Virus record (IMG/VR): IMGVR_UViG_3300028558_000791
Span: 62,001-126,000 of that record
Direction: 5' to 3' (one strand)
Length of the DNA: 64,000 nt
The notes under the pieces are model-generated. The model was not told the origin of the DNA, made no database searches, and was given only the letters and a program-made list of their open reading frames with translations. How positions within the stretch are numbered: position 1 is the first letter of the stretch; each line of letters starts with the position of its first letter. Made by a program: the position numbers and the translations under genes. This document shows, piece after piece, positions 260-61,857 of the stretch.

Positions 260-335
260 GTCGTCGTACCCAAATGGTTAAGGGACGGAGCTGCAACCTC
301 CGTATGTGTCCGTTCGAATCGGACCGACGACTCCA
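260..335 (+). tRNA. tRNA-Cys(GCA)
   Basis: Acceptor GTCGTCG/CGACGAC, loop CT-GCA-AC, TTCGAAT T-loop, U73, encoded CCA. Confidence 0.95.
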
Positions 336-344
336 TACCACTAA

Positions 345-434
345 GGAGATTTGCGTGAGTGGTTGAAACGGTCACCCTGGAAAGGTGAAGGGGTCGCAAG
401 GCTCCCATGGGTTCGAATCCCATAGTCTCCTCCA
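345..434 (+). tRNA. tRNA-Ser(GGA), U73 discriminator
   Basis: Cloverleaf with long variable arm, loop CT-GGA-AA, ends TCTCC-T-CCA. Confidence 0.93.
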
Positions 435-440
435 AAACAA

Positions 441-638
441 ATGTGCTATCTATGTTTACAAGACAATCCATTTAATATCCAGGATTTATCTAAAGAAAAG
501 ATAGATATTAAGAGGAATAGAGCTAAGTTAGTTAAAGAGCTATTAGAGTTTTATTATAAAGAAGTTGTTTGTGATGATGGTAAGTTGGAGATAATAAAAC
601 TAAAAGAAGAGCAGTATAAATTATCCCGAGAGATGTAA
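441..638 (+). CDS. Hypothetical protein
   Basis: 65-aa ORF exactly filling the gap between two tRNAs. Confidence 0.5.
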   Translation: MCYLCLQDNPFNIQDLSKEKIDIKRNRAKLVKELLEFYYKEVVCDDGKLEIIKLKEEQYKLSREM

Positions 639-643
639 TATAT

Positions 644-733
644 GGAAACTTGGCCGAGTGGTTTAAGGCGCTAGTCTTGAAAACTAGAGATCTCGAAAGG
701 GGTCCGGGGGTTCGAATCCCTCAGTTTCCGCCA
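644..733 (+). tRNA. tRNA-Ser(TGA)
   Basis: Cloverleaf, long variable arm, loop CT-TGA-AA, G73-CCA. Confidence 0.95.
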
Positions 734-755
734 GATTCATTATTGAAAGATTAGA

Positions 756-1676
756 ATGAATAAGATTGCAACATTAGTAGGATGTGCCATTGGAGATGCT
801 CTTGGCAATCCATTTGAGATGTGGAGTGTCCATGAGCCCAAGCTTAAAGAGTGGGATGGTCAGTTCAAAGCTGGCGGTACTTTCTGGGTAGGAGAGGCCG
901 GACAATATACCGATGATACCCTAATGAGCCTTGCTTTGTCATATTCTTTGCTTGAGAAGAGCGGATTCGATCAAGAGCACGTAGGTCTTCAGTACTTGGC
1001 TTGGATGGAGTCTGGTAACACTCGCGGTATTGGCGGGACTACTCACAGAGCTTTGACACGAATGAAGAACGGAGCATCCGCTCTTGAGAGTGGTGTTACC
1101 CATAACGATGGCAAGCCTGCCTCTGGTAATGGAACTGCTATGAGAGCCACACCAATTGGCCTCTGGTACCGTAAAGATATCGGCAAGTTGATTGAGGTTG
1201 CAATGGCGGACGCATCCATCACTCATAATTCATTTGAACCCAAGATGGGTTCTGTGGCGGTTGCACTAGGTACTGCATTGATTGCTAATGGTGCAACTGA
1301 CATGATTGAGGTCTTAGAAGAGGTAGCTGAGGTAATCTCTGAATCTATTGTCAAAGAGAAGTTAGTATTGGCCTTAACCCATCTAAAACTGGGTACCGAA
1401 CATTTTGAGGCCCTTGCGCAGATCGGCGTCAATGGCTATGTTCCAGAGACGGTTGGCGCGGCATTCTATTGTTTAGGGGCCAACGCAAACTATAGAGATA
1501 CTGTAGTGTTAGCTGTCAAGGCTGGCGGAGATACTGATACCACTGCGGCGATTGCTGGTGGCATGGCTGGTACTTTATACGGACTTGATGGTATTCCATT
1601 AGAATATAAGGATAAAGTAGAGAATTTCGAGTTATTGCAATCATTGACTGATGAACTTGTCAATAATGAGATATAA
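756..1676 (+). CDS. ADP-ribosylglycohydrolase (ARH3/DraG family), copy 1
   Basis: GCAIGDALG, YTDDT, GNGTAMR, GGDTDTTAAIAGGMAG metal-binding motifs. Confidence 0.92.
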   Translation: MNKIATLVGCAIGDALGNPFEMWSVHEPKLKEWDGQFKAGGTFWVGEAGQYTDDTLMSLALSYSLLEKSGFDQEHVGLQYLAWMESGNTRGIGGTTHRALTRMKNGASALESGVTHNDGKPASGNGTAMRATPIGLWYRKDIGKLIEVAMADASITHNSFEPKMGSVAVALGTALIANGATDMIEVLEEVAEVISESIVKEKLVLALTHLKLGTEHFEALAQIGVNGYVPETVGAAFYCLGANANYRDTVVLAVKAGGDTDTTAAIAGGMAGTLYGLDGIPLEYKDKVENFELLQSLTDELVNNEI

Positions 1677-1691
1677 TAGTTAGCATAACAC

Positions 1692-1781
1692 GGAGAGTTG
1701 TCCGAGTGGTCTATGGTGAGAGTTTGCTAAACTCTTGGGGTCGAAAGGCCCCCACAGGTTCGAATCCTGTACTCTCCGCCA
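1692..1781 (+). tRNA. tRNA-Ser(GCT)
   Basis: Cloverleaf, long variable arm, loop TT-GCT-AA, G73-CCA. Confidence 0.95.
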
Positions 1782-1792
1782 CACTGTGTTAA

Positions 1793-1883
1793 GGAATAGT
1801 GCGTGAGTCCGGCTGAAACGGTCTGTCTCGAAAACAGAAGCTCCTTATGGGAGCCAGGGGTTCAAATCCCTTCTATTCCTCCA
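1793..1883 (+). tRNA. tRNA-Ser(CGA), U73 discriminator
   Basis: Cloverleaf, long variable arm, loop CT-CGA-AA, ends ATTCC-T-CCA. Confidence 0.92.
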
Positions 1884-4234: not shown

Positions 4235-4417
4235 ATGGAAAAGGAAGATTTGCTGGATCTCAAGGAACTCATTACAGAGTACGGGGCAAAGGAAGCATTG
4301 AAGGTTTTTCGTTTGGCATGTAGTGAAGTAGCCGACGATTACTCTGACCTGGGACTAAACGAACGTGCCCGAGAAGCGGCCGAGGTGGCTGACCTCTTGA
4401 GCAAGGTCTACATGTGA
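4235..4417 (+). CDS. Hypothetical protein
   Basis: 60-aa ORF with GAGG SD. Confidence 0.6.
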   Translation: MEKEDLLDLKELITEYGAKEALKVFRLACSEVADDYSDLGLNERAREAAEVADLLSKVYM

Positions 4418-4429
4418 TATAGTATTAGC

Positions 4430-4969
4430 ATGATTGCAATTCTCATCACAGCGTTTGTCGCTTTCTTCGCCTCTAGCCTTTTTGGTTATGTAGTCCATCG
4501 ATCACTCCATCAGAAATGGACTGGTCGTCTCAATCAGAAACATATGACGCATCATCTTATCCTGTATCCTCCGTCTAACTATCTGTCAGACAAGTACAGA
4601 CAGGCTGGTGTGGATAATACAGTTTTTACTTTCGCAATAGCAGCTATACCTTTGGTAGCAATCCCTCTCTTCTTAGGAGCCTTAGGGATTCTTTCATTAC
4701 CATCAGTTGTTACCGCTGTGATAGTAATGGGTCTCATGGGAGTTCTTCATGACCAACTTCATGATGCTTTCCATATCAAAAATCATTTTCTTAATCGAAT
4801 TCCGGGAGTTAGGAATATCTTTGCATACTGGAACCGACTGCACTATCTACATCACGTAGATATGCAGAAGAACTTCGGAATTTTCTTATTCCATTGGGAC
4901 CATGTATTCAAAACATATTGGAAGAACGATGGAAGAGAAGATATATACGTGCCGAACCGAAGAGATTAG
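4430..4969 (+). CDS. Membrane di-iron hydroxylase (fatty-acid hydroxylase/sterol desaturase/CrtZ superfamily)
   Basis: TM helices plus His boxes HRSLH, HMTHH, HDQLHDAFH, LHYLHH, and KNFGI. Confidence 0.8.
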   Translation: MIAILITAFVAFFASSLFGYVVHRSLHQKWTGRLNQKHMTHHLILYPPSNYLSDKYRQAGVDNTVFTFAIAAIPLVAIPLFLGALGILSLPSVVTAVIVMGLMGVLHDQLHDAFHIKNHFLNRIPGVRNIFAYWNRLHYLHHVDMQKNFGIFLFHWDHVFKTYWKNDGREDIYVPNRRD

Positions 4970-5165
4970 CGGCACAACCTACCGTTTCTATCTTTATCTA
5001 AAAGATGAAACTAAGTGGCGCTTAAGTGGAAGCTATCAATCAAGAGAAGAGGTTGATAGTTACGTGGAACGAATGATGAAAGCTCATCCTGAATATAGGA
5101 TTGAGATTACAGAACACCCTTGGACAAACAACGTCTGCATAGAATGTGGAAGAGAGGAGTATTAA
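4929..5165 (+). CDS. Hypothetical protein
   Basis: ORF ending in a CxxC (CIECG). Confidence 0.55.
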   Translation: MEEKIYTCRTEEISGTTYRFYLYLKDETKWRLSGSYQSREEVDSYVERMMKAHPEYRIEITEHPWTNNVCIECGREEY

Positions 5166-5252
5166 TATGTTAACAAATGTAATTTCAGATCGGATCATTT
5201 CCAATGATTCCGGCGTTGGCGTAGATACTCTACTCCACCTCAGCACCGTTAT

Positions 5253-5281
5253 TTGACAAGGCGCCATTAGCATAATAGTTT
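5253..5281 (+). promoter_or_regulatory. Sigma70-like promoter for fusA
   Basis: TTGACA-N17-TAGTTT. Confidence 0.6.
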
Positions 5282-5285
5282 AGCG

Positions 5286-5376
5286 AAGGATCGCCTCGTC
5301 TTTGGACGCATACCGTACTGGTATGCCATCCGTTTAGATTTGAATGGGCTAATCCTTTAGCTCAAAGGAAACTGTT
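5286..5376 (+). promoter_or_regulatory. Structured 5' leader of fusA, possible translational switch
   Basis: AAGGAT(5286-91)/ATCCTT(5352-57) closes three hairpins; the alternative CCTTT-agctc-AAAGG hairpin covers the SD. Confidence 0.5.
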
Positions 5377-7470
5377 ATGAAGCACGTTAGCATTGATAGA
5401 TATCGCAACATCGGGATTATGGCTCACATTGACGCGGGCAAAACCACTGTAAGCGAACGCATCTTGTTCTATGCCGGTCTCATCCATACAATGGGTGAAG
5501 TACACGATGGTGACACTGTTATGGATGATGATCCGCGTGAGAAGACTCGCGGCATCACTATCAACTCAGCCGCTACCACTTTGTACTGGAAAGGTTCGGA
5601 TAACTCCCAGCCCGACCATCGCATCAACTTAATTGACACTCCAGGTCACATTGACTTCACTGTCGAAGTGGAAAGGTCTCTCCGTGTTCTTGACGGCGCT
5701 GTCTGTGTATTAGACGGCTCCCAAGGCGTTGAGCCTCAGACTGAACAGGTATGGCGTCAAGCTGACCGCTACAACGTAGCTCGTATCTGTTTTGTCAACA
5801 AGATGGATAAGACTGGCGCTAACTTCAATATGTCCGTTGATTCTCTTCGTGAGAAGCTAGGAGTCAAGGTCGTTCCTATTCAACTCCCTTATGGAGAAGA
5901 GGAACAGTTCCATGGCATCATTGACCTTATCAACATGAGAGTCGTTAGGTTTGATGAATCTACCAAGGGTAAGTCATTTTCATTCATGACTATGGACTAC
6001 CTTCCCGATAGCTTGATGAGCCACGTTCATCGAGCCAGGGAGCGTATGCTTGAAGCCCTAGCTGATGTCAGCGACTCCATCATGGAGAAATTCTTAGACG
6101 GCAGACTCAATGATATCTCTATTGAAGAGATTCATGCGGCTCTCCGTAAAGGAACTATCTCTCGCACTCTCTTCCCAGTTCTTTGCGGCTCTGCCCTAAA
6201 GAACAAGGGAGTACAGATGCTCCTTGATGCGGTCTTGGCCTATCTACCATCTCCAGTTGACTTGCCTCCTGTGTCTGGAATCAATCCAGATAACAAAGAG
6301 CAAGTTACTCGTCGCTTGGTAGATGAGGAACCATTGTCTGCTTTGGCATTCAAAATCATTAGCGAAGACACTGGCAACCTAACCTTTATTCGAGTTTACT
6401 CGGGTGTCCTACGTTCTGGCTCTTATGTGTATAACATAAGTCGCGGACAGAAGGAACGCGTCTCCCGTCTTGTACTTATGCACGCAAGTGATAGGCAGAA
6501 GATTGAAGAGGCAAGGGCGGGTGACATTGTTGCCGCTATTGGCTTGAAGACTACATATACTGGTGACACGCTGTGTGATGAGAAGTCTCCTATCATCTTA
6601 GAGAAGATGGACTTCCCTGATCCAGTAGTCGAGCTTTCTATTGAGCCGAAGACCTCGGCTGACTATGATAAGCTAGCTGTTGCTTTACAGAAGATGTTGC
6701 TTGAAGACCCAAGCCTCAAGGCTTATACTGACCCAGATACCTCTCAGACTATTCTGAAGGGTATGGGTGAGCTTCACCTTGAGATTGTAGTTGATAAGCT
6801 TCGTACTGACCGTGGAGTTGGTGTAACGACTGGACAACCTCGTGTTTCCTATCGTGAGACCATTACCAAGGAAGGTCATGCGGACTATAAACACAAAGCC
6901 CAGAATGGTGGCAAAGGTGTCTATGGTCATGCTGTCATCAAGGTAAAGCCAGGTGCTAGAGGCTCAGGCTTCGTCTTCCATGACGAAGTAGTAGGCGGCA
7001 GAATCCCAAGAGAGTTTATTCCATCTGTGGAGAAAGGCATCAAGAATGCCCTTCAAAACGGAATCTACTCTGGCAATCCAACGGTTGACATCGAGGTTAC
7101 CCTCATAGATGGTAGCACTCATGCAGTCGATGGTTGCGCCTTTGGATTCGAACTAGCTGGTTCAAAAGCTATCCAAGAAGCTGTCAATGCTGCGGGTCCA
7201 ACTGTGTTGGAGCCAATCATGGCAGTGGAAGTGGTAGCGCCTGAGGAGTATATGGGTGATGTTATTGGTGTCTTGTCTGCCCGTGCAGGCCAGATTACTA
7301 ATACATTGAGTCGTGGTAATGCTAGAGTCGTACAGGCTAACGTGCCATTGAGAAGCCTTTTCGGGATCACTACTGACCTCCGAGGAAGGACTCAAGGTCG
7401 TGCTGTACCTAGTATGGTCTTCTCTCATTACGATACTTGTTCCTTGAAACCATCGGAGCTTGATAAGTGA
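5377..7470 (+). CDS. fusA: Elongation factor G
   Basis: AHIDAGKTT, RGITI, DTPGHIDF, NKMD, GSAL, MGELHLEI, YRETI, LEPIMAVEV; five-domain length (697 aa). Confidence 0.97.
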   Translation: MKHVSIDRYRNIGIMAHIDAGKTTVSERILFYAGLIHTMGEVHDGDTVMDDDPREKTRGITINSAATTLYWKGSDNSQPDHRINLIDTPGHIDFTVEVERSLRVLDGAVCVLDGSQGVEPQTEQVWRQADRYNVARICFVNKMDKTGANFNMSVDSLREKLGVKVVPIQLPYGEEEQFHGIIDLINMRVVRFDESTKGKSFSFMTMDYLPDSLMSHVHRARERMLEALADVSDSIMEKFLDGRLNDISIEEIHAALRKGTISRTLFPVLCGSALKNKGVQMLLDAVLAYLPSPVDLPPVSGINPDNKEQVTRRLVDEEPLSALAFKIISEDTGNLTFIRVYSGVLRSGSYVYNISRGQKERVSRLVLMHASDRQKIEEARAGDIVAAIGLKTTYTGDTLCDEKSPIILEKMDFPDPVVELSIEPKTSADYDKLAVALQKMLLEDPSLKAYTDPDTSQTILKGMGELHLEIVVDKLRTDRGVGVTTGQPRVSYRETITKEGHADYKHKAQNGGKGVYGHAVIKVKPGARGSGFVFHDEVVGGRIPREFIPSVEKGIKNALQNGIYSGNPTVDIEVTLIDGSTHAVDGCAFGFELAGSKAIQEAVNAAGPTVLEPIMAVEVVAPEEYMGDVIGVLSARAGQITNTLSRGNARVVQANVPLRSLFGITTDLRGRTQGRAVPSMVFSHYDTCSLKPSELDK

Positions 7471-7700
7471 GTGAGGAGAAGGAACTGAAGGGGAAATTCG
7501 TCAAAGTTGCTAAGGCCGATGGGTCTCAGGACTTTGACGAATCCTTTTGGGAAATATGGGACGGCGACTATTTACTATTCAAAAAGTCTGTCAAAGAACT
7601 TTGTAATGAGATTCGTTGGCTAGATTATGAAATGATTTTCTGTCCGGAGTTTGGTAAGTTGCTTTTGAAAAGAGCAAAGAAGTTGAAAGCGTTCTGGTAA
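7467..7700 (+). CDS. Hypothetical protein with C-terminal LKAFW motif
   Basis: GTG start overlapping the fusA stop; ends KRAKKLKAFW. Confidence 0.7.
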   Translation: MSEEKELKGKFVKVAKADGSQDFDESFWEIWDGDYLLFKKSVKELCNEIRWLDYEMIFCPEFGKLLLKRAKKLKAFW

Positions 7701-8458
7701 TGATTCTAATAACACAGCAAAGAGTTGGTCAGGCACACGGGGAAATCCTAGCTATGCAGATAGCGGCCAGGGAGATGGGTTGGGAAGTCCTCACCGCGCC
7801 CTCTGGCTGGCGTTTAGAGGACGATTTGATCAAGTCAGGCGTCAAGGGCGTACCCTATGGCTCCCAGACCTTCTGTGAGGTTATAGCGCAGCAGATGGGC
7901 TGGACTTTGAAGCAGAACAGTTTTGACTGGCTCTCTAAGCTTCACCCTGCCTATTTGAAGCGTCAAGTTGACTTTATGACCCTTGGCGAAGCCAAGAAGC
8001 TTAAGGAGACTAAGTTCATCAAGCCGGCGGATGATAAGGTCTTTCAGTGCGGAGTCTATACTCCTGGTACCCTTATCACGCCTGAGGTAGTCCCAGACGA
8101 TACTCCTACCCTTGTCTCAGAGGTAGTTGAATGGGACTTGGAGTATCGTACCTTTGTTGACAAGAGGGTAAGGACCTGGTCTAATTATATCTTTTTCGAT
8201 CATATTGCTGACCATAGGTTCTGGAATATGGTTCCGCTTGAAGAGGAGCGGTACCCTCATGACTTCGTAAATGATTTACTTCATGACATGGAGTATCATG
8301 ACATGGGCGACCTCATCACGGTCCCCAGCGTTATAGATGTTGGTAGAATCAAAGGAAAGGGTTGGGCCATTATTGAGACCAACCAAGCTTGGGCTTCTGG
8401 TCTTTATGGCTGTGGACCTATGCAAGTCCTAAAAGTATTGGAGCAAAGCTGTGTCTGA
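7700..8458 (+). CDS. ATP-grasp protein (R2K/DUF4343-like), copy 1
   Basis: KFIKPADDKVF, EYRTFV, VIDVG...WAIIETN...SGLYGC. Confidence 0.75.
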   Translation: MILITQQRVGQAHGEILAMQIAAREMGWEVLTAPSGWRLEDDLIKSGVKGVPYGSQTFCEVIAQQMGWTLKQNSFDWLSKLHPAYLKRQVDFMTLGEAKKLKETKFIKPADDKVFQCGVYTPGTLITPEVVPDDTPTLVSEVVEWDLEYRTFVDKRVRTWSNYIFFDHIADHRFWNMVPLEEERYPHDFVNDLLHDMEYHDMGDLITVPSVIDVGRIKGKGWAIIETNQAWASGLYGCGPMQVLKVLEQSCV

Positions 8459-10854: not shown

Positions 10855-10930
10855 CGTGGTGTAGCAAATCGGCATATGCGACTGTTTCATACGCAGTATT
10901 AAGTGGGTTCGACTCCCACCTCCACGACCA
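10855..10930 (+). tRNA. tRNA-CAT (elongator Met or Ile2)
   Basis: Loop TT-CAT-AC, T-arm GTGGG-TTCGACT-CCCAC, A73-CCA; one acceptor-stem mismatch. Confidence 0.85.
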
Positions 10931-10932
10931 AA

Positions 10933-11328
10933 TCAATTCGTAGCAATTCCCGAACCTGGATCTCTACCAGTGAATGATAAGGTGGTTGTTCCTTGTGGAA
11001 CCTGAGGGAAGCTACTGATATGTTTCTCAAGATACTTCTTAATTTGTGCTGGTAACTTAGCGTAATTACCTGCAAATTGTGGAGGTTCAACTGATGGTGC
11101 TGACACGTCAACGTTCAAACCACCCAAGGTAGCCTCAGTAATGGTGACGTTGATATTTAAGTCAGCCTGATCTTTCTTGAGTTGAGATGGAAAATTCATG
11201 ATTCCATTAGCGCTGCTCTCGCCATAGCTGGCGGCATTCTGAATGATTTCTTGAAGATTCTGCGATTGAGCATACTTATTTTGAAATTTGTTTGCTAGTT
11301 TTAGAAGTAGGGCCTGAGACTTTTTCAT
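10933..11328 (-). CDS. Hypothetical protein, possibly virion-associated
   Basis: 131-aa reverse-strand ORF beginning MKKSQALLLKLANKFQNKYAQ. Confidence 0.75.
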   Translation of the reverse strand: MKKSQALLLKLANKFQNKYAQSQNLQEIIQNAASYGESSANGIMNFPSQLKKDQADLNINVTITEATLGGLNVDVSAPSVEPPQFAGNYAKLPAQIKKYLEKHISSFPQVPQGTTTLSFTGRDPGSGIATN

Positions 11329-11369
11329 ACAAGATATATGGCTTTAGTGGTATATAAGATACCGAAAAT

Positions 11370-11444
11370 GGTCGATTAACTCAGCGGTAGAGTGATGCCC
11401 TTACAAGGCGTAAGTCGGGGGTTCGAATCCCTCATCGACTACCA
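11370..11444 (+). tRNA. tRNA-Val(TAC), copy 1
   Basis: Cloverleaf, loop CT-TAC-AA, A73-CCA. Confidence 0.95.
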
Positions 11445-11517
11445 GATATGCGGGTTTTACCAAGGGCATAGCGTCCCGAGGCATCTCTTGGAAGGTGACT
11501 TAGTGTATTCCAAACAT

Positions 11518-11592
11518 TGGAGATTAGCTCAATGGTAGAGCGTCGGTTTTACACTCCGAAGACTTAGGGTTCGATCCCCTTATCTCCAACCA
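11518..11592 (+). tRNA. tRNA-Val(TAC), copy 2
   Basis: Acceptor TGGAGAT/ATCTCCA, loop TT-TAC-AC, U31-U39 mismatch, CCA. Confidence 0.88.
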
Positions 11593-11660
11593 TGTGTCCC
11601 TAACATATAGGGGATGACACCTATCACAGTGGTGTGGAATGCTGGGGAGTACAGCACCAT

Positions 11661-11734
11661 GGGCGGTTAACTCAATGGTAGAGTGCTAGCATGACTCGCT
11701 AGCTACAGGGGTTCGATTCCCTTACCGCCTACCA
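11661..11734 (+). tRNA. tRNA-Val(GAC), atypical anticodon loop
   Basis: Stem CTAGC/GCTAG, loop AT-GAC-TC (A32, U37), A73-CCA. Confidence 0.85.
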
Positions 11735-14079: not shown

Positions 14080-14154
14080 GCGAATGTAACTCAATGGTAG
14101 AGTCTCTGCCTTCCAAGCAGATGGTTGAGGGTTCGAGCCCCTTCGTTCGCTCCA
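14080..14154 (+). tRNA. tRNA-Gly(TCC), copy 1
   Basis: Cloverleaf, loop CT-TCC-AA, U73-CCA. Confidence 0.95.
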
Positions 14155-14160
14155 AGCTCT

Positions 14161-14267
14161 GGTGCCTATAGAAACCTATTCGCCCCTAATTCGAGTCCAA
14201 AGGGCTGTGACATGGCCAGCCACGAATTAGGATAAGCAGTAAAGTCAATCTGTAGGAAATAAACACC
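14161..14267 (+). ncRNA. Candidate structured ncRNA A (long irregular hairpin with central bubble)
   Basis: Nested helices GGTG/CACC, CCTATAG/CTGTAGG, CCTAATTCG/CGAATTAGG, GGCTG/CAGCC; lies between two tRNAs with no ORF. Confidence 0.5.
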
Positions 14268-14276
14268 ACGCTATAA

Positions 14277-14351
14277 GCAGACTTAATTCAGTGGTAGAAT
14301 GATTCGTTGCCAACGAATATGTCACGGGTTCGAGCCCCGTAGTCTGCTCCA
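14277..14351 (+). tRNA. tRNA-Gly(GCC), copy 1
   Basis: Cloverleaf, loop TT-GCC-AA, U73-CCA. Confidence 0.95.
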
Positions 14352-14473
14352 AGACGAATGCCAGGTAGGATTACATGGATAAAGCGTCAGGAGTAATCCT
14401 GATTCGAGATGGTTCAAACCCATCAAACTTTCCCGTAAGGGATCGTAAAAAATCTTTCCAAATTTAGTCGTCT
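14352..14473 (+). ncRNA. Candidate structured ncRNA B (multi-branch, with T-arm mimic)
   Basis: AGACGA/TCGTCT closing stem, AGGATTAC/GTAATCCT, GATGG-TTCAAAC-CCATC, TCCC-GTAA-GGGA. Confidence 0.5.
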
Positions 14474-14477
14474 ATTT

Positions 14478-14551
14478 GCGGTTATCTTCTAATGGTAAGA
14501 ATACTGGTCGCCATCCAGAGAACGCCGGTTCGATTCCGGCTAACCGCTCCA
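14478..14551 (+). tRNA. tRNA-Gly(GCC), copy 2, C33
   Basis: Acceptor GCGGTTA/TAACCGC, loop TC-GCC-AT, U73-CCA. Confidence 0.82.
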
Positions 14552-14587
14552 CGATTCCCAATCTTTCATTTGAAAGCGTGACTTTAT

Positions 14588-14740
14588 ATGCGTTCACATC
14601 ATTATCTCTTTCTCTTTCTTCTCGTGGTAGTTGTAGGCTTCCTAACTCTTAGAGGATGTGTTCACTGTACCGGCAGAGTTCTCTCTGGCCCAACTCCTAC
14701 AAATACTATCTATGTTGTTCCAGGAGGACCAGCTAGGTAA
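14588..14740 (+). CDS. Small membrane protein (50 aa, not in the ORF track)
   Basis: MRSHHYLFLFLLVVVVGFLTLRGCVHC...; fills the gap between tRNAs. Confidence 0.45.
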   Translation: MRSHHYLFLFLLVVVVGFLTLRGCVHCTGRVLSGPTPTNTIYVVPGGPAR

Positions 14741-14760
14741 GTACAAAGCAGTTAAAATTA

Positions 14761-14844
14761 GCGGGCATCGCATAGCGGCGATTGCACTTGCCTTCCAAGC
14801 AAGACTCTGAAACAACGTGGGTTCGAGTCCCACTGCCCGCTCCA
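14761..14844 (+). tRNA. tRNA-Gly(TCC), copy 2, 13-nt variable region
   Basis: GCGGGCA/TGCCCGC, loop CT-TCC-AA, insert ACTCTGAAACAAC before the T-arm. Confidence 0.88.
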
Positions 14845-18235: not shown

Positions 18236-18309
18236 TCAGGGCTCGTCTAACGGCAGGATCGAGGACTCCGAATCCTCTGATATTGGTTCGAATCCAATGC
18301 CCTGAACCA
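18236..18309 (+). tRNA. tRNA-Arg(CCG)
   Basis: TCAGGGC/GCCCTGA, loop CT-CCG-AA, A73-CCA. Confidence 0.9.
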
Positions 18310-28437: not shown

Positions 28438-29841
28438 ATGAATTACGAAGCAGAGAATTTTCTCATCGATACGGATAGTTACAAGGCCAGCCATTACCTT
28501 CAATATCCTGAAGGAACAACGAGTATGTTTAGCTACATCGAATCTCGTGGTGGTGATTACAAGAAGACGGTGTTCTTCGGCCTACAATACTACGTCAAGA
28601 AGTACCTTACTCACAGAGTGACTGTGGAAGAGGTTGAAGAGGCCAAGGAGTTCTTCGAAGCACACGGAGAGCCATTCAACTACGAAGGTTGGATGTATAT
28701 CGCTAAGGAACTTGGTGGTAAGTTGCCGGTTCGTATTCGAGCCGTTCCCGAGGGTAGCGTTGTTCCTACTCACAATATCTTAGTCAGTATCGAATCTACT
28801 GATCCCAAAGTCTTTTGGGTGGTATCCTGGATCGAAACAATGCTACTTAGGGTCTGGTATCCTATCAACGTTGCAACCAGGAGTCACAAAATTAGACAGA
28901 TCATCTCAGAAGCCTTGAGAATCTCGGCAGATGATCCGCAGGCAGAAATCAATTTCAAGCTGCACGATTTCGGAAGCAGAGGCGTTTCGTCTCAGGAATC
29001 GGCAATGATTGGTGGAGCCGCTCATTTGGTTAACTTCATGGGTTCCGATACTGTCGTTGGTGTGCGATGCGCCAACAAATTCTACAACTCTAAGATGGCT
29101 GGTTTCAGTATCCCTGCCATGGAGCACAGCTCAGTTACCTCTTGGGGCAGAGAGCACGAAGCTGATGCCTACCGCAACATGCTTCAGAAGACTGGAAAAC
29201 CGGGCGGATTAGTTGCTTGTGTAAGCGACTCTTACGATCTGTGGAATGCCTGTTCTAACCTGTGGGGCAAAGAACTGAAGGATGAAGTGATCAAGTCGGG
29301 AGCTACTGTAGTTATCCGTCCTGACTCTGGAGATCCTTCCAGTGTTGTCCTCCGCACTGCACAATTGCTTGAAGAAAAGTTTGGAGTTACTGTCAATAGC
29401 AAAGGCTTCAAGGTTCTCAACAATGTACGCATTATCCAGGGAGACGGTATCAATGAAGACTCAATTCAAGAGATCCTTAACAATTTGCTGGATCATACTT
29501 ACAGCGCCAGCAATATTGCTTTTGGTATGGGCGGCGCTCTGCTACAGCAACATAATCGCGATACACTGAAGTTCGCCATGAAGTGTAGCCACATCTATCG
29601 TACGGTAGATGGTAAGGAAGTTTCAGTGGATGTCTTCAAGGATCCTGTTACTGACCACGGTAAAGTTAGTAAGGCTGGCCGTTTGGATTTGATTCGTGAC
29701 ATGTCTGGCAATTGGTCCACTGTCACTCTTGGAGACAAAGATCATCACCTGTTGACGGTGATGGATCTTGTCTATGAGAATGGTGAGGTTCTCAAGGAAT
29801 ATACGTTTGACGAAATTAGAAACCGTGCGAAGGGAGTGTAA
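28438..29841 (+). CDS. nadV: Nicotinamide phosphoribosyltransferase (NAMPT)
   Basis: DTDSYKASH, LHDFGSRG, IPAMEHS, VSDSYD, IRPDSGD, IIQGDG, FGMGGALLQ. Confidence 0.95.
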   Translation: MNYEAENFLIDTDSYKASHYLQYPEGTTSMFSYIESRGGDYKKTVFFGLQYYVKKYLTHRVTVEEVEEAKEFFEAHGEPFNYEGWMYIAKELGGKLPVRIRAVPEGSVVPTHNILVSIESTDPKVFWVVSWIETMLLRVWYPINVATRSHKIRQIISEALRISADDPQAEINFKLHDFGSRGVSSQESAMIGGAAHLVNFMGSDTVVGVRCANKFYNSKMAGFSIPAMEHSSVTSWGREHEADAYRNMLQKTGKPGGLVACVSDSYDLWNACSNLWGKELKDEVIKSGATVVIRPDSGDPSSVVLRTAQLLEEKFGVTVNSKGFKVLNNVRIIQGDGINEDSIQEILNNLLDHTYSASNIAFGMGGALLQQHNRDTLKFAMKCSHIYRTVDGKEVSVDVFKDPVTDHGKVSKAGRLDLIRDMSGNWSTVTLGDKDHHLLTVMDLVYENGEVLKEYTFDEIRNRAKGV

Positions 29842-43742: not shown

Positions 43743-45628
<1,886 letters not shown>

Positions 45629-45629
<1 letters not shown>

Positions 45630-59135: not shown

Positions 59136-59221
59136 GCCGATGTGGCGGAATGGCAGACGCGGAAGTTTCAAAAACTTCTGTCCGCAAGGACGTGTGGGTT
59201 CGAGTCCCTCCTTCGGCACCA
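59136..59221 (+). tRNA. tRNA-Leu(CAA)
   Basis: Long variable arm, loop TT-CAA-AA, A73-CCA. Confidence 0.95.
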
Positions 59222-59251
59222 GCATTTTCAATTCAACCTTTCAAGTAAGTC

Positions 59252-59713
59252 ATGAATATTAAGAATCTGTTGACCTTAACGGTTCGTACTGTAGACTTTA
59301 ACTTAGTTGCTAAGCAACCAGAACTTCTGGTTCAGCTAAGAAAATTGACGCTCTCTCCATATTCCGGCTTGAACTATGAACTCAATCGGATGCTGGAAGA
59401 TGTAAAGACACGAGAAGTCAGATGTCAAGTGCTTTTGGCCTATCGTTTTCGTAAACTAGTAGGCTGGGCCATCTTATCGAAAGAAACTACCCAATACAAT
59501 TTTTCTCGGTCTTTTGATGGTTTCAAGGCTGAGAATGGTATGATGTTTCAAGTTTTCGTGGATCCGACTTATCGAAGGCAAGGAATTGCTTCTGAAATAT
59601 ATAAGAAGGCTCAACATCTGGCAAATAATGAACTTCTTCATGTTTGTCCATGGGATGAAAGAAGTACAAATTTCTACGCCCGACATACGACAACAGCTAC
59701 TAAATGGCTGTGA
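59252..59713 (+). CDS. GNAT acetyltransferase
   Basis: VFVDPTYRRQGIASEIY acetyl-CoA loop; STNFY. Confidence 0.8.
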   Translation: MNIKNLLTLTVRTVDFNLVAKQPELLVQLRKLTLSPYSGLNYELNRMLEDVKTREVRCQVLLAYRFRKLVGWAILSKETTQYNFSRSFDGFKAENGMMFQVFVDPTYRRQGIASEIYKKAQHLANNELLHVCPWDERSTNFYARHTTTATKWL

Positions 59714-59746
59714 AATCTAGCAATAAGGCGATATATAAAACACAAC

Positions 59747-59830
59747 GCTACCATGGTGGAATGGCAGACACAGCAGTCTTAGAAGCTGCCGCCGCAAGGC
59801 GTGGGGGTTCGAGTCCCTCTGGTAGCACCA
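59747..59830 (+). tRNA. tRNA-Leu(TAG)
   Basis: Long variable arm, loop CT-TAG-AA, A73-CCA. Confidence 0.95.
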
Positions 59831-59831
59831 A

Positions 59832-60047
59832 ATGGAACATGATTGGCAAGTTGAACTAGTTGAATACTATGATATGGATTCAGACTGGGTATGTCAAAAA
59901 TGTCAAGTTAGAATGCACAGAGAGTTTCCTCGTAAAGAGGGTGGCGGTTACAGAGACACCAGAGAAACTTTAACTGAATTCAAAATTAGACTTGAATCTC
60001 CATGGGAAGCTTGGAGAAAGATTCCTAAAGAATGTTCCAGTAAGTAA
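59832..60047 (+). CDS. Hypothetical protein
   Basis: 71-aa ORF between tRNAs, CQKC. Confidence 0.55.
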   Translation: MEHDWQVELVEYYDMDSDWVCQKCQVRMHREFPRKEGGGYRDTRETLTEFKIRLESPWEAWRKIPKECSSK

Positions 60048-60049
60048 AT

Positions 60050-60126
60050 GCTCAGGTGACGGAATTGGCATACGTACGAGTCTCAGAAACTCGGTTTTGA
60101 GGGTTCGACCCCCTTCTTGAGCACCA
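60050..60126 (+). tRNA. tRNA-Leu(CAG) lacking the long variable arm
   Basis: Leu-type D-loop, loop CT-CAG-AA, 5-nt variable loop GTTTT, A73-CCA. Confidence 0.88.
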
Positions 60127-60130
60127 AATT

Positions 60131-60217
60131 GTCATCGTGGTGGAATGGTATACACACTAGTCTGAGAAGCTAGGGCTCGTAAGGGCCGTGAGGGTTCGAG
60201 TCCCTCCGATGACACCA
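60131..60217 (+). tRNA. tRNA-Leu(GAG)
   Basis: Long variable arm, loop CT-GAG-AA, A73-CCA. Confidence 0.95.
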
Positions 60218-60229
60218 ATTGAGAGGGAA

Positions 60230-61006
60230 TCAACCACCCCAAGTTTTTGGAGCTTCATAAGGGTTAGGTGGCAACTGCTCTGATTCTTTTTCTCTTGTTA
60301 CTTGATAAACGTTAGCATTATCATCATAAGGAATGGCTTGTTTGGCTTTGTATTGAGGTTCTCTTTTGAGATTTTCAAAAGCAAGTTCATTGCTAACGCC
60401 AGGCTGCCTAATACTTTTCTTGTAAATGTCAAGCGCCGCTTGAGTTTGTCTTCCTAACTTACCATCAGGGTTTACTCCGAGCATAGTCTGGAAGACAGGA
60501 TCAATTTTAGGACCAGTCCAACCCTGTGGTTTGGCGGGAGTCTTTGGAGAGACCATTGTTTGAGTTGGAAGATTAATGACATTTGATTGAGGCTGGGAGT
60601 TCCAGTTAATAGGAACTGGGCCCTGTCGATTATCTGTTCCAAACATCTTTTGTTGGCCAGCTTGAACAATTTCAGAATACTGCTCTTGAGAAATCTGGTT
60701 TCCCATATAATCAGTGTGAGCTTGCTGCAAATAACCGCCAACATACTCTTTGACTTTGTCAGGAGTTAGGGTGGCAGTATTGACAGCATTAATGCTTTGA
60801 ATACGACTCTGTGTTGATACCTTAGAGCTTTCAATATCTTCTGGTCTGACTTGTCCGACAGCAAATTTGTTTAATAAAGCATCATAATACTTGGAGCCCA
60901 GCTTTTTCTTTTCTTTTTTAGCGGTCTTGACGGCCAAAGCCCTGGTGGCTAAATTCTCGTAATCAGCGGCCATCTTCATCAATTCTTTTAGGGAGTAGGA
61001 CATCAA
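60230..61006 (-). CDS. Hypothetical protein with a peptidoglycan-binding-like segment
   Basis: FQTMLGVNPDGKLGRQTQAAL resembles PG_binding_1; N-terminal LMKMAADYENLA helix. Confidence 0.75.
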   Translation of the reverse strand: MMSYSLKELMKMAADYENLATRALAVKTAKKEKKKLGSKYYDALLNKFAVGQVRPEDIESSKVSTQSRIQSINAVNTATLTPDKVKEYVGGYLQQAHTDYMGNQISQEQYSEIVQAGQQKMFGTDNRQGPVPINWNSQPQSNVINLPTQTMVSPKTPAKPQGWTGPKIDPVFQTMLGVNPDGKLGRQTQAALDIYKKSIRQPGVSNELAFENLKREPQYKAKQAIPYDDNANVYQVTREKESEQLPPNPYEAPKTWGG

Positions 61007-61069
61007 AACCTCTTTTGCGTACGATATATAAGAGTATACTAATAATTAGGCAAGATTATTACCACATAT

Positions 61070-61145
61070 GGTTTGCGTTGTCATTTGGCAATGATAGGTG
61101 TCTGTGAAACATCAAAAGCGGGTTCGATTCCCGTCGCTCACCCCA
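61070..61145 (+). tRNA. tRNA-His(GTG), copy 1 (divergent)
   Basis: Encoded G-1:C73, loop CT-GTG-AA, two acceptor-stem mismatches. Confidence 0.75.
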
Positions 61146-61157
61146 TACCATTTTTAT

Positions 61158-61232
61158 GGTGACTGTAGTTCAATGGTAGAACGCTAGCTTGTGGCGCTAG
61201 CTACGCGGGTTCGATTCCCGTCAGTCACCCCA
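61158..61232 (+). tRNA. tRNA-His(GTG), copy 2
   Basis: Encoded G-1:C73, loop TT-GTG-GC, CCA. Confidence 0.93.
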
Positions 61233-61236
61233 AAAT

Positions 61237-61311
61237 GGGCCGTTCGTCTACTGGCTAGGACACTTGGCTTTCACCCAGGAAAAACGGGATCGATACCCGT
61301 ACGGCTCACCA
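61237..61311 (+). tRNA. tRNA-Glu(TTC)
   Basis: Loop CT-TTC-AC, T-loop ATCGATA, CCA. Confidence 0.9.
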
Positions 61312-61488
61312 ATGAAAAAGATAGTTAGTTTAGCGTTTCTTTTTTTAATTGCAGCATCTTGCAATCCTAATCCTGCGAATTATCATGTACCGCAGGGCTA
61401 TCAGACCTGCCGAACAATTGCGGACTGTCCTCGTGGCACCTACTGTGGTTTTGTAGAAATTGATAGTTATGCTGTTTGCCGCAGATGA
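61312..61488 (+). CDS. Small Cys-rich lipoprotein
   Basis: Lipobox IAASC; CRTIADCPRGTYC...C module. Confidence 0.6.
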   Translation: MKKIVSLAFLFLIAASCNPNPANYHVPQGYQTCRTIADCPRGTYCGFVEIDSYAVCRR

Positions 61489-61521
61489 ATCTGGCAATAA
61501 GCTGATATAATAGATACGACT

Positions 61522-61597
61522 GGCCCATTCGTCTAATGGTTTAGGACGGCAGCCTCTCACGTTGCTAATACGGGTTCGAATCCCGTATGGGTCACCA
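61522..61597 (+). tRNA. tRNA-Glu(CTC)
   Basis: Loop CT-CTC-AC, CCA. Confidence 0.93.
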
Positions 61598-61610
61598 AGT
61601 AAGTATTCAT

Positions 61611-61687
61611 GTCTCTGTAACTCAACTGGATAGAGTGGCAGTCTTCTAAACTGCAAGTTGGGGGTTCGAGTCCCTCCAGAGATGCCA
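61611..61687 (+). tRNA. tRNA-Arg(TCT)
   Basis: Loop CT-TCT-AA, G73-CCA. Confidence 0.95.
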
Positions 61688-61700
61688 AGTAAGATAACAT

Positions 61701-61777
61701 GTGCCTGTAGCTCAGTTGGATAGAGCGTCGGTCTACGAAACCGAAGGTCGAAGGTTCGAATCCCTCCAGGCATGCCA
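61701..61777 (+). tRNA. tRNA-Arg(ACG)
   Basis: Loop CT-ACG-AA, G73-CCA. Confidence 0.95.
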
Positions 61778-61782
61778 AGTAC

Positions 61783-61857
61783 GTCTCCATAGTGAAACGG
61801 ATATCACGATTGTCTTCGAAACAATCAGTACAGGTTCGATTCCTGTTGGAGATGCCA
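61783..61857 (+). tRNA. tRNA-Arg(TCG)
   Basis: Loop CT-TCG-AA, G73-CCA. Confidence 0.93.

What the first reader, a model, noticed from the sequence alone, without database searches (positions are those of the whole stretch)
5253..5376. Switch-like leader upstream of phage EF-G
Seen: between a TTGACA-N17-TAGTTT promoter and the ATG lies a 95-nt leader. In state A, AAGGAU (5286-91) pairs with AUCCUU (5352-57), enclosing hairpins CGUC-UUUG-GACG, GCAUACC-GUACU-GGUAUGC and CCGUU/AAUGG, and leaving the SD AAAGGA (5364-69) free. In state B, CCUUU (5354-58) pairs with AAAGG (5364-68) and hides the SD. The two states are mutually exclusive. Inference: an anti-anti-SD translational switch or autogenous operator controlling EF-G dosage.
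Basis: partly seen in the sequence, partly recalled or inferred. Interest (0 to 1): 0.6.

Follow-up and report, generated by a model that had tools for sequence, protein, structure and literature searches.

The report
Two-hairpin leader before megaphage EF-G

Summary
The proposed switch fails both tests that could be run.

**Folding.** Only hairpin GCAUACC/GGUAUGC is stable. State B never exceeds 0.10. State A reaches 0.02-0.68 in this sequence, depending on the ends chosen.

**Comparison.** Four further distinct homologous leaders were recovered from related ~490-kb phage contigs. Across them:
- Hairpin C and an extended hairpin P2 (5304-5331) each keep pairing through four compensatory pairs.
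- The state A and state B helices break, with no compensation.

**Rate and origin.**
- The leader changes more slowly than EF-G third-codon positions.
- It is single-copy in its genome and matches no Rfam family.
- Closer relatives instead carry a 110-aa 4Fe-4S ferredoxin gene 10 nt upstream of EF-G.
- The 29-codon ORF at 5167-5256 is a relic of that gene.

**Best reading.** This is a lineage-restricted cis-acting structured leader that keeps the SD open. Its function is inferred, since no RNA data exist. Interest is moderate to low.

The parts
5167..5256 (+). 29-codon ORF (MLTNVISDRIISNDSGVGVDTLLHLSTVI*). It is a relic of the 5' part of a 4Fe-4S ferredoxin gene, with the first Cys cluster deleted.
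   Evidence: It sits in the position of the 110-aa Fer4 gene that lies 10 nt upstream of EF-G in relatives. The DNA alignment shows a 42-nt deletion. Alignment score against ferredoxin genes reaches z = 9.5 over shuffles. pN/pS is 0.43-0.95, against 0.07-0.13 for EF-G.
5253..5281 (+). TTGACA-N17-TAGTTT, a sigma-70-like promoter candidate. TTGACAAGGCG is invariant in the five homologs. The relic ORF's TGA stop lies inside it.
   Evidence: The pattern TTGACA-N16-18-TAnnnT is enriched in non-coding DNA of this genome: 16 of 50 sites touch non-coding sequence, against 6.3% expected. The spacing to any -10-like hexamer is not conserved among the homologs, and the scan tool did not call the site.
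5255..5300 (+). Candidate helix P0: GACAAGGCG (5255-5263) pairs with CGCCUCGUC (5292-5300), enclosing a loop of variable length that holds the conserved GCGAAGGA.
   Evidence: It is in the RNAalifold consensus, with 8 pairs paired in 5 of 5 sequences. Both strands are invariant, so there is no covariation test. It is predicted in full read-through transcripts of all five.
5304..5331 (+). Hairpin P2: outer stem GGACG/CAUCC, inner stem GCAUACC/GGUAUGC, loop GUACU.
   Evidence: Inner-stem probability is about 1.0. Four pairs carry compensatory double changes, and at least three distinct stem versions occur among the five sequences. Mean probability in the homologs is 0.66-0.89.
5337..5347 (+). 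Invariant block GAUUUGAAUGG. Most of it is unpaired; its last three bases (UGG) open hairpin C.
   Evidence: Invariant in the five full leaders and in the partial sixth, L085.
5345..5364 (+). Hairpin C: UGGGCUAA-UCCU-UUAGCUCA, 8 bp, ending one base before the SD core.
   Evidence: It is the dominant 3' structure. Four consecutive compensatory pairs connect GGGCUAA/UUAGCUC with GGAUCGA/UCGAUCC, three more pairs change on one side only, and 100% of cells are paired. Its free energy is -5.4 to -12.3 kcal/mol.
5365..5379 (+). SD core AAGGA (5365-5369), 7-nt spacer, and the EF-G start codon ATG (5377-5379).
   Evidence: AAGGAAAYTGTTATG is conserved in the leader-type and in the ferredoxin-type relatives with an intact gene. 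In native folds of the five homologs, mean SD accessibility is 0.5-0.94. In the isolated 3' domain, A5365, A5366 and G5367 are open and G5368/A5369 are partly paired.
5336..5373 (+). Weak candidate helix P3: AGAUUU (5336-5341) pairs with GAAACU (5368-5373), extending hairpin C across the 3' edge of the SD.
   Evidence: RNAalifold consensus. All cells are paired, with one-sided changes only. Its probability is low, 0.01-0.26, in whole-leader folds.
5377..7470 (+). EF-G (fusA-like) gene, 697 aa.
   Evidence: Pfam finds GTP_EFTU, GTP_EFTU_D2/EF-G_D2, EFG_III, EFG_IV and EFG_C, all above their cut-offs. Relatives at 60-96% identity lie on contigs of 447-511 kb.

Best explanation
The 120 nt between the relic ORF and EF-G form a lineage-restricted, cis-acting structured RNA leader. 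Its conserved core is two independently folding hairpins, P2 (5304-5331) and C (5345-5364), separated by an invariant and largely single-stranded block, GAUUUGAAUGG.

**Proposed mechanism.**
- Hairpin C abuts the SD. In this phage it locks up the pyrimidine tract UCCUU, the only strong local partner for the SD. The SD core and the AUG therefore stay single-stranded, and EF-G is translated by independent initiation.
- P2 is GC-rich and is followed by a U-rich tract. It most likely acts as a stability or barrier element for the EF-G message.
- The module stands where relatives have a ferredoxin gene that ends 10 nt before EF-G. The two genes were probably translationally coupled there.
- On this reading the leader is a constitutive RBS-presenting structure, not a ligand-driven or two-state switch.

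**Shown:** the sequence elements, the covariation, the dominance of hairpin C in folding, divergence slower than third-codon positions, single-copy status, and the ferredoxin origin of the 5' relic.

**Inferred:** that selection acts on the RNA, and what the hairpins do.
For: - **Covariation.** Five distinct homologous leaders: window, L097, L096, L088 and L092 (identical to L093-L095), plus the partial L085. The consensus has 33 pairs with 95.8% of cells paired. Eight pairs change on both sides. None of 500 column shuffles reaches the observed covariation score, and slid controls give 0-2 such pairs.
- **Strand.** G.U wobbles occur in both helices on the + strand. They would be C.A mismatches on the - strand, which argues for RNA in the sense orientation.
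- **Folding.** Hairpin C has probability 0.47-0.97 and P2 0.66-0.89 in all five. C is 4.4 to 11.7 kcal/mol more stable than state B. Blocking the 5' arm of C in silico drops SD accessibility to 0.01-0.04 in the window and L088.
- **Rate.** Leader identity to the window is 0.72-0.88, against 0.55-0.72 for EF-G third-codon positions.
- **Stability rank.** The leader ranks 17th of 719 genes for upstream fold stability.
- **Gene maps.**
Against: - No transcript data exist. No RNA run holds the locus, so the 5' end and even the expression of the leader are unknown.
- There are only five distinct sequences. Each compensatory block could be a single event: L097 and L096 share the alternative stem of hairpin C.
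- Recombination among these phages is evident. L001, which carries the ferredoxin gene, sits in the same 90% EF-G cluster as the leader-type L096 and L097. The leader's low divergence could therefore reflect recent spread rather than constraint.
- The idea that hairpin C protects the SD from UCCUU holds in only 2 of 5 sequences.
- This sequence alone is not significantly more structured than shuffles (z = -1.71).
Confidence: 0.5

Rival explanations
1. Protein-binding translational operator. Hairpin C, and/or P2 with the invariant GAUUUGAAUGG block, is bound by a protein that represses or activates initiation at the adjacent SD. The protein could be EF-G itself, a ribosomal protein, or a phage factor.
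For: Variable stems combined with conserved unpaired nucleotides are typical of protein operators. The invariant 5337-5347 block and the U, A and U positions of the P2 loop fit this pattern. Hairpin C sits directly against the SD. Structured RNAs upstream of fusA have been predicted in streptococci and in Pelagibacter (PMC2965389).
Against: No binding partner can be named. There is no resemblance to any Rfam ribosomal-protein leader. No second copy of the motif occurs upstream of other genes in the 480-kb genome. With five sequences at about 80% identity, invariance of 11 nt is not statistically strong.
Confidence: 0.18
2. Transcription or processing signal. P2 with the following U-rich tract (GUUUAGAUUU) is a partial intrinsic terminator or attenuator, or the hairpins are RNase III/E processing or 3'-end-stabilising sites between the upstream genes and EF-G.
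For: P2 is a stem of about 12 bp followed by a U-rich tract. In L096 the tail is UUUUAGAUUU. The independent L091/L003 leader type also has two strong hairpins followed by a U-rich tract just before the SD.
Against: The terminator scan does not call it. The tail is poor in U in L088 (AUAGGAUUU) and L092. An efficient terminator 45 nt before the start codon would leave EF-G without a transcript. The stems are shorter than the ~20 bp typical of RNase III substrates (general knowledge).
Confidence: 0.15
3. Neutral pseudogene debris. The hairpins are DNA quasi-palindromes kept or perfected by template-switch mutation, and the leader has no RNA function.
For: The stretch just upstream is a decaying ferredoxin gene with relaxed constraint (pN/pS 0.43-0.95). 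In L091/L003 a perfect 12-bp hairpin looks like an inverted duplication of ferredoxin codons. Each compensatory block could be one templated event.
Against: G.U wobbles specific to the + strand occur in both helices. The leader diverges more slowly than third-codon positions. P2 has at least three different stem versions. The single-stranded blocks are invariant.
Confidence: 0.12
4. A switch between state A (AAGGAU 5286-91 paired with AUCCUU 5352-57, SD free) and state B (CCUUU 5354-58 paired with AAAGG 5364-68, SD hidden).
For: Both pairings are possible in this sequence. State A reaches 0.28-0.68 for some transcript ends. AAGGA is conserved, and the loop of hairpin C stays pyrimidine-rich (UCCU, UCUC, ACCU, UCUU) in all homologs.
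Against: State A has no compensatory change, and 3 of its 6 pairs are broken in some sequences. State B is broken in L097 and L096. State A has probability 0.00-0.08 in four homologs, and state B is at most 0.05 in all five. The 3' arm of state A lies inside the covarying hairpin C.
Confidence: 0.03

Closest known systems
E. coli str-operon regulation (S7 translational operator between rpsL and rpsG, with fusA translated downstream) and the predicted rpsL/fusA leaders in streptococci and Pelagibacter (PMC2965389)
   Same: A structured RNA sits upstream of an EF-G gene, and the presumed purpose is to set EF-G output.
   Different: There is no rpsL/rpsG context here. No Rfam family matches. The element lies in a phage, follows on the remains of a ferredoxin gene, and is restricted to a few closely related ~490-kb phage genomes.
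Phage translational operators that are hairpins next to the SD (T4 gene 43 and RegA targets, MS2/Qbeta coat-protein operator). This comparison rests on general knowledge and was not tested here.
   Same: A short stable hairpin lies immediately 5' of, or at, the ribosome-binding site of a phage gene, with a variable stem and conserved unpaired bases.
   Different: No binding protein is known or inferable. The motif occurs once in the genome. The SD itself is not inside the hairpin.
SD-sequestering RNA switches and thermometers (riboswitch expression platforms, ROSE/fourU)
   Same: An anti-SD-like pyrimidine tract (UCCUU) lies close to the SD, and its pairing partner decides SD accessibility in this sequence.
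   Different: The SD-hiding conformer is not conserved and is thermodynamically minor. No aptamer-like conserved core is present.
Intercistronic stabilising or processing hairpins of phage polycistronic mRNAs (T7 RNase III sites, T4 intergenic hairpins). This comparison rests on general knowledge.
   Same: Conserved hairpins lie between co-oriented phage genes.
   Different: The stems are shorter than typical RNase III substrates. No RNA-end data are available.

Membership tests
Two-state anti-SD / anti-anti-SD translational switch | Both alternative helices are conserved, ideally covarying, among homologs | tested here: not met
   State A: no compensatory pairs, and 3 of 6 pairs broken in some sequences. 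State B: no compensatory pairs, and broken in L097/L096.
Two-state anti-SD / anti-anti-SD translational switch | The two conformers have comparable free energy, so both are populated | tested here: not met
   State B has probability at most 0.05 in all five. State A is near 0 in four of five. Hairpin C is 4.4-11.7 kcal/mol more stable than B.
Any described RNA family (Rfam 15), including ribosomal-protein leaders and riboswitches | Covariance-model match at or near the gathering score | tested here: not met
   At gathering threshold only tRNAs match in the window. Within 5100-5450 nothing scores better than E = 2.6, and all hits are eukaryotic snoRNA or lncRNA noise.
Conserved structured cis-regulatory leader (generic) | Helices supported by compensatory substitutions in homologous sequences | tested here: met
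   P2 and hairpin C each have four pairs with changes on both sides. No shuffle of 500 reaches the covariation score, and slid controls give 0-2 such pairs.
Conserved structured cis-regulatory leader (generic) | Transcribed as part of the mRNA, with a demonstrated effect on expression | not testable with these tools
   No RNA run holds the locus. All four runs laid were DNA contigs.
Sigma-70-type promoter | -35 and -10 hexamers at 16-18 nt spacing, conserved among homologs | tested here: inconclusive
   The window has a perfect TTGACA, a 17-nt spacer, and TAGTTT matching 3 of 6; the scan did not call it. TTGACA is invariant, but the spacing changes by +3 and -7 nt, and L092 lacks a -10. The pattern is enriched in non-coding DNA genome-wide.
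Intrinsic terminator / attenuator | GC-rich stem followed directly by a U-tract | tested here: inconclusive
   The scan does not call it. The tail after P2 is U-rich in window, L097 and L096, but poor in L088 and L092.
4Fe-4S ferredoxin gene (as the origin of the upstream relic) | Same genomic position and significant sequence similarity to the intact gene in relatives | tested here: met
   For 5167-5256: the synteny matches, the alignment shows a 42-nt deletion, and z reaches 9.5. For 5257-5364 the similarity is not significant, with z from -1.7 to 2.2.

The most novel reading that the evidence does not exclude
The real switch may be P0 against a long-range helix L, set by which transcript is made or by translation of the relic ORF.

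- In read-through transcripts, helix P0 (5255-5263 with 5292-5300) forms in all five homologs, and the EF-G AUG is open (0.42-0.96 unpaired).
- The relic ORF's UGA stop lies inside the 5' strand of P0. When that strand is occupied, for example by a terminating ribosome, CAUAAUAGUUU (5271-5281) pairs with AAACUGUUAUG (5369-5379). AUG accessibility then falls to 0.01-0.03 in four of five homologs.
- In L088 this helix is kept through an inserted C that turns a U.G wobble into a C-G pair plus a bulge.
- A transcript starting at the TTGACA promoter would lack both 5' strands and would be constitutively open.

If true, a pseudogene relic has been recruited as a translation-sensing regulator of a phage translation factor.

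**Against it:** both strands of P0 are invariant, so it cannot be tested. Helix L is absent in L092. Its duplex energy of -13.4 kcal/mol is unexceptional, ranking 124th of 719 genes and matched by 28 of 1000 shuffles.
Probability: 0.1. Interest if true: 0.6.

Novelty: new member of a known kind. Interest (0 to 1): 0.35.

Why it matters
Huge phages carry their own translation factors, including EF-G (PMC7162821).

This locus gives a small natural experiment. Closely related ~490-kb soil phages have one of three arrangements:
- a ferredoxin gene abutting EF-G;
- the two-hairpin leader described here;
- a second, differently folded relic.

Both the ferredoxin form and the leader form occur in contigs from one soil run. 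Comparing them would show how a phage re-establishes independent translation of a dosage-sensitive factor after losing an upstream, probably coupled, gene. It would also show how quickly structured RNA can arise beside the remains of a dead gene. It does not open a new class of regulator, and the proposed switch is not there.

Tried and rejected
**Searches that found nothing**
- Megablast of 4400-7500 against INPHARED phages: no match.
- Exact and degenerate leader patterns are absent from IMG/VR and from GTDB genomes.
- Rfam found only tRNAs at gathering threshold, and noise in a relaxed local search.
- The covariance model R1, built on the five leaders, finds only the locus itself in the 480-kb genome (next hit E = 3.4). 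It finds nothing in the three IMG/VR relatives that carry ferredoxin or the other relic.

**Data that were unavailable**
- Several close relatives (P0001-P0004) gave gene maps but no DNA.
- No RNA run holds the locus. The laid DNA contigs added no new leader variant that could be read in full.
- Pfam Terminase_6C is not found in the genome. This is not informative, so the phage status rests on the IMG/VR record, the gene content and the relatives.

**Ideas rejected**
- *Leader peptide.* The short frames inside the leader differ in frame, length and sequence among the homologs (read from alignment A5).
- *tRNA-like element.* ARAGORN and Rfam find none at this locus.
- *Sarcin-ricin-loop mimic in the P2 loop.* No GNRA or bulged-G motif is present (read from sequence).
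- *Whole leader as a collinear ferredoxin remnant.* Significant only for the 29-codon ORF, not for 5257-5364.
- *Helix L as an exceptional feature.* The duplex energy is unexceptional genome-wide.

Full report
**1. Context**

The window is bases 62,001-126,000 of a 480,838-bp virus record.
- It carries 25 tRNA genes.
- It also carries typical jumbo-phage metabolism and replication genes: nicotinamide phosphoribosyltransferase, a helicase and an NAD-dependent ligase.
- ORF 5377-7470 is a complete EF-G, with all five domains above the Pfam cut-offs.
- Its relatives at 60-96% identity lie on contigs of 447-511 kb. One is named as an uncultured Caudovirales phage.
- Phage-encoded EF-G in huge phages is already described (PMC7162821).

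**2. The observation**

There are two small corrections:
- the first two inner hairpins share G5308;
- AATGG lies at 5343-5347.

This sequence alone folds only slightly better than shuffles (z = -1.71; 14 of 200 shuffles fold as well).

Partition-function folding over six choices of transcript ends gives the following:
- Only GCAUACC/GGUAUGC is always formed.
Its probability is 0.3-0.95.
- State A has 0.02-0.68.
- State B has 0.01-0.10.

**3. Relatives**

*Most relatives have no such leader.*
- L001, L002, L086, L087, L090 and the P0003 contig have a 110-111-aa 4Fe-4S ferredoxin gene that ends 10 nt before EF-G. The EF-G SD lies at that gene's 3' end.
- L003 and L091 have a different non-coding stretch.

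*A sub-group shares the window's architecture:* a 29-codon ORF followed by about 120 nt.
- These are L088/L089, L092-L095, L096, L097, the P0004 contig (gene map only) and the truncated L085.
- This gives five distinct full leaders plus one partial.

**4. What is conserved**

RNAalifold on the five leaders and explicit pair counting give a consensus of four helices.

| Helix | Window coordinates | Support |
|---|---|---|
| P0 | 5255-5263 with 5292-5300 | Invariant in all five, so untestable |
| P2 | 5304-5331 | Four pairs with compensatory double changes; at least three stem versions |
| P3 | 5336-5341 with 5368-5373 | One-sided changes only; weak |
| C | 5345-5364 | Four consecutive compensatory pairs (GGGCUAA/UUAGCUC to GGAUCGA/UCGAUCC), three pairs with one-sided changes, 100% of cells paired |

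- For the whole structure, 95.8% of cells pair.
- No shuffle of 500 reaches the covariation score.
- Sliding the partners by 1-3 columns gives 0-2 compensatory pairs, against 8 observed.
- The helices contain G.U pairs on the + strand. These would be mismatches on the other strand, which favours a sense-strand RNA over a DNA palindrome.
- The block GAUUUGAAUGG (5337-5347) is invariant.

**5.

- The state A helix shows no compensatory change and is broken at three of its six pairs in one or more homologs.
- State B is broken in L097 and L096.
- Per-sequence partition functions give state A 0.28-0.41 in the window but 0.00-0.08 in the other four. State B is at most 0.05 everywhere.
- Hairpin C has a free energy of -5.4 to -12.3 kcal/mol. 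State B has +0.6 to -3.3 kcal/mol.
- The 3' arm of state A lies inside the covarying hairpin C.

The A/B switch is therefore not supported.

One part of the idea survives in this phage and in L088. If the 5' arm of C is made unavailable in silico, UCCUU pairs with the SD and SD accessibility drops to 0.01-0.04. This is not so in the other three homologs.

**6. Promoter**

- TTGACA-N17-TAGTTT is plausible here.
- TTGACA-N16-18-TAnnnT is enriched in non-coding DNA of this genome. Sixteen of 50 sites touch non-coding sequence, against 6.3% expected.
- The scan tool does not call the site.
- In the homologs the spacing changes by +3 or -7 nt. L092 has no -10-like hexamer at a usable distance.
- The invariance of TTGACAAGGCG can equally be explained by helix P0 or by the relic ORF's stop codon.

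Whether the leader is a 5' UTR or an intercistronic segment is open. No RNA run holds the locus.

**7. Origin**

- The 29-codon ORF 5167-5256 starts at the ferredoxin start position behind the same SD.
- It aligns with ferredoxin codons 1-6, then a 42-nt deletion that removes the first CxxCxxCxxxC cluster, then roughly codons 21-36.
- The similarity is significant, with z up to 9.5.
- It evolves with pN/pS of 0.43-0.95, against 0.07-0.13 for EF-G. It is therefore a relic, although its frame is still open in all five sequences.
- For the leader proper (5257-5364), similarity to the 3' part of the ferredoxin gene is only suggestive: GATTGAATCGGGCAAC against GATTTGAATGGGCTAA, and GGATGAGTCTACAT against GGATGAGTGTCAT in L088. 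It is not significant.

**8. Constraint**

- Leader identity to the window is 0.72-0.88.
- EF-G third-codon positions show 0.55-0.72.
- This is consistent with purifying selection.
- Recombination is evident, however, because ferredoxin-type and leader-type loci occur within one 90% EF-G cluster. Recent spread of the module is an alternative explanation.
- The motif is single-copy in the genome and absent from the searched collections.
- It matches no Rfam family.

**9. Mechanism**

My committed reading (confidence 0.5) is a constitutive, cis-acting structured leader.
- Hairpin C presents the SD in single-stranded form directly 3' of a stable stem and keeps the local anti-SD-like tract occupied.
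- P2 serves as a stability or barrier element.
- The module replaces the ferredoxin-EF-G junction.

Rivals:

| Rival | Confidence |
|---|---|
| Protein-binding operator | 0.18 |
| Terminator, attenuator or processing site | 0.15 |
| Neutral debris with DNA-level palindrome maintenance | 0.12 |

The most novel reading not excluded is a P0-versus-L alternative that would couple EF-G initiation to the transcript isoform or to translation of the relic ORF. I give it about 0.1.

**10. Verdict**

The region is a real and mildly interesting conserved RNA structure. It is a new, lineage-restricted example of a known kind of element. The proposed switch mechanism is not supported. Function remains inferred until transcript ends and structure-function tests are available.

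Noticed in passing
window 5271-5281 and 5369-5379: CATAATAGTTT, which overlaps the supposed -10 hexamer, is complementary to AAACTGTTATG (SD edge, spacer and EF-G start codon): 11 bp with one U.G wobble. It is predicted to hide the AUG when helix P0 cannot form. In L088 it is kept through an inserted C. Its 5' strand is deleted in L092. The duplex energy is unexceptional genome-wide.
   Followed up: partly
L091:1400-1522 and L003:2888-3010: A second, different non-coding relic lies upstream of EF-G in other relatives. It has a 12-bp hairpin, UCUUCGUCAUCA/UGAUGAAGAAGA, whose 3' arm matches ferredoxin codons (HPDDEEL), so it looks like an inverted duplication. A second hairpin follows whose sequence differs between the two loci. 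The SD is paired to an upstream UCC tract. L091 folds at z = -3.16.
   Followed up: partly
window 5175-5364 (run X3): One soil metagenome holds two kinds of contig. One carries a leader-type locus. The other has 326 other letters replacing 5175-5364, which is the size of the intact ferredoxin gene. The two forms appear to coexist in one sample.
   Followed up: partly
window 260-1883, 10855-11734, 14080-14844, 18236-18309, 59136-61857: There are 25 tRNA genes, clustered by amino acid: Cys 1, Ser 4, Met 1, Val 3, Gly 4, Arg 5, Leu 4, His 2, Glu 2. All are on the + strand.
   Followed up: no
window 14761-14844: A tRNA-Gly(tcc) of 84 nt is called. This is about 10 nt longer than the other three tRNA-Gly genes nearby, which suggests an insertion, an intron or a long variable arm.
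   Followed up: no
window 4430-4969, 4902-5165, 7467-7700, 7700-8458: The neighbourhood of EF-G is conserved: a fatty-acid-hydroxylase-family membrane protein upstream, a variable 87-aa Cys-containing ORF that is missing in some relatives, a small ORF overlapping the EF-G stop, and an R2K-clade ATP-grasp protein downstream.
   Followed up: partly
G000 whole genome: The sixteen TTGACA-N16-18-TAnnnT sites that touch non-coding DNA mostly have -10 hexamers of the form TAnnTT (TATGTT, TATCTT, TAAGTT, TACGTT, TAGTTT). This hints at the host's or the phage's preferred -10 variant.
   Followed up: no
window 28438-29841 and 43755-45629: Genes for a nicotinamide phosphoribosyltransferase and an NAD-dependent DNA ligase, an NAD-salvage and NAD-use pair known from other large phages.
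   Followed up: no
L001:2950-2990, L090, L086: The intact ferredoxin genes have an internal hairpin, GGCA-CUUCC/GGAGG-UGCC, in their last 60 nt. Its 5' arm corresponds to the 5' arm of hairpin C in the leader. Hairpin C may therefore be a re-paired descendant of that coding-region hairpin.
   Followed up: no
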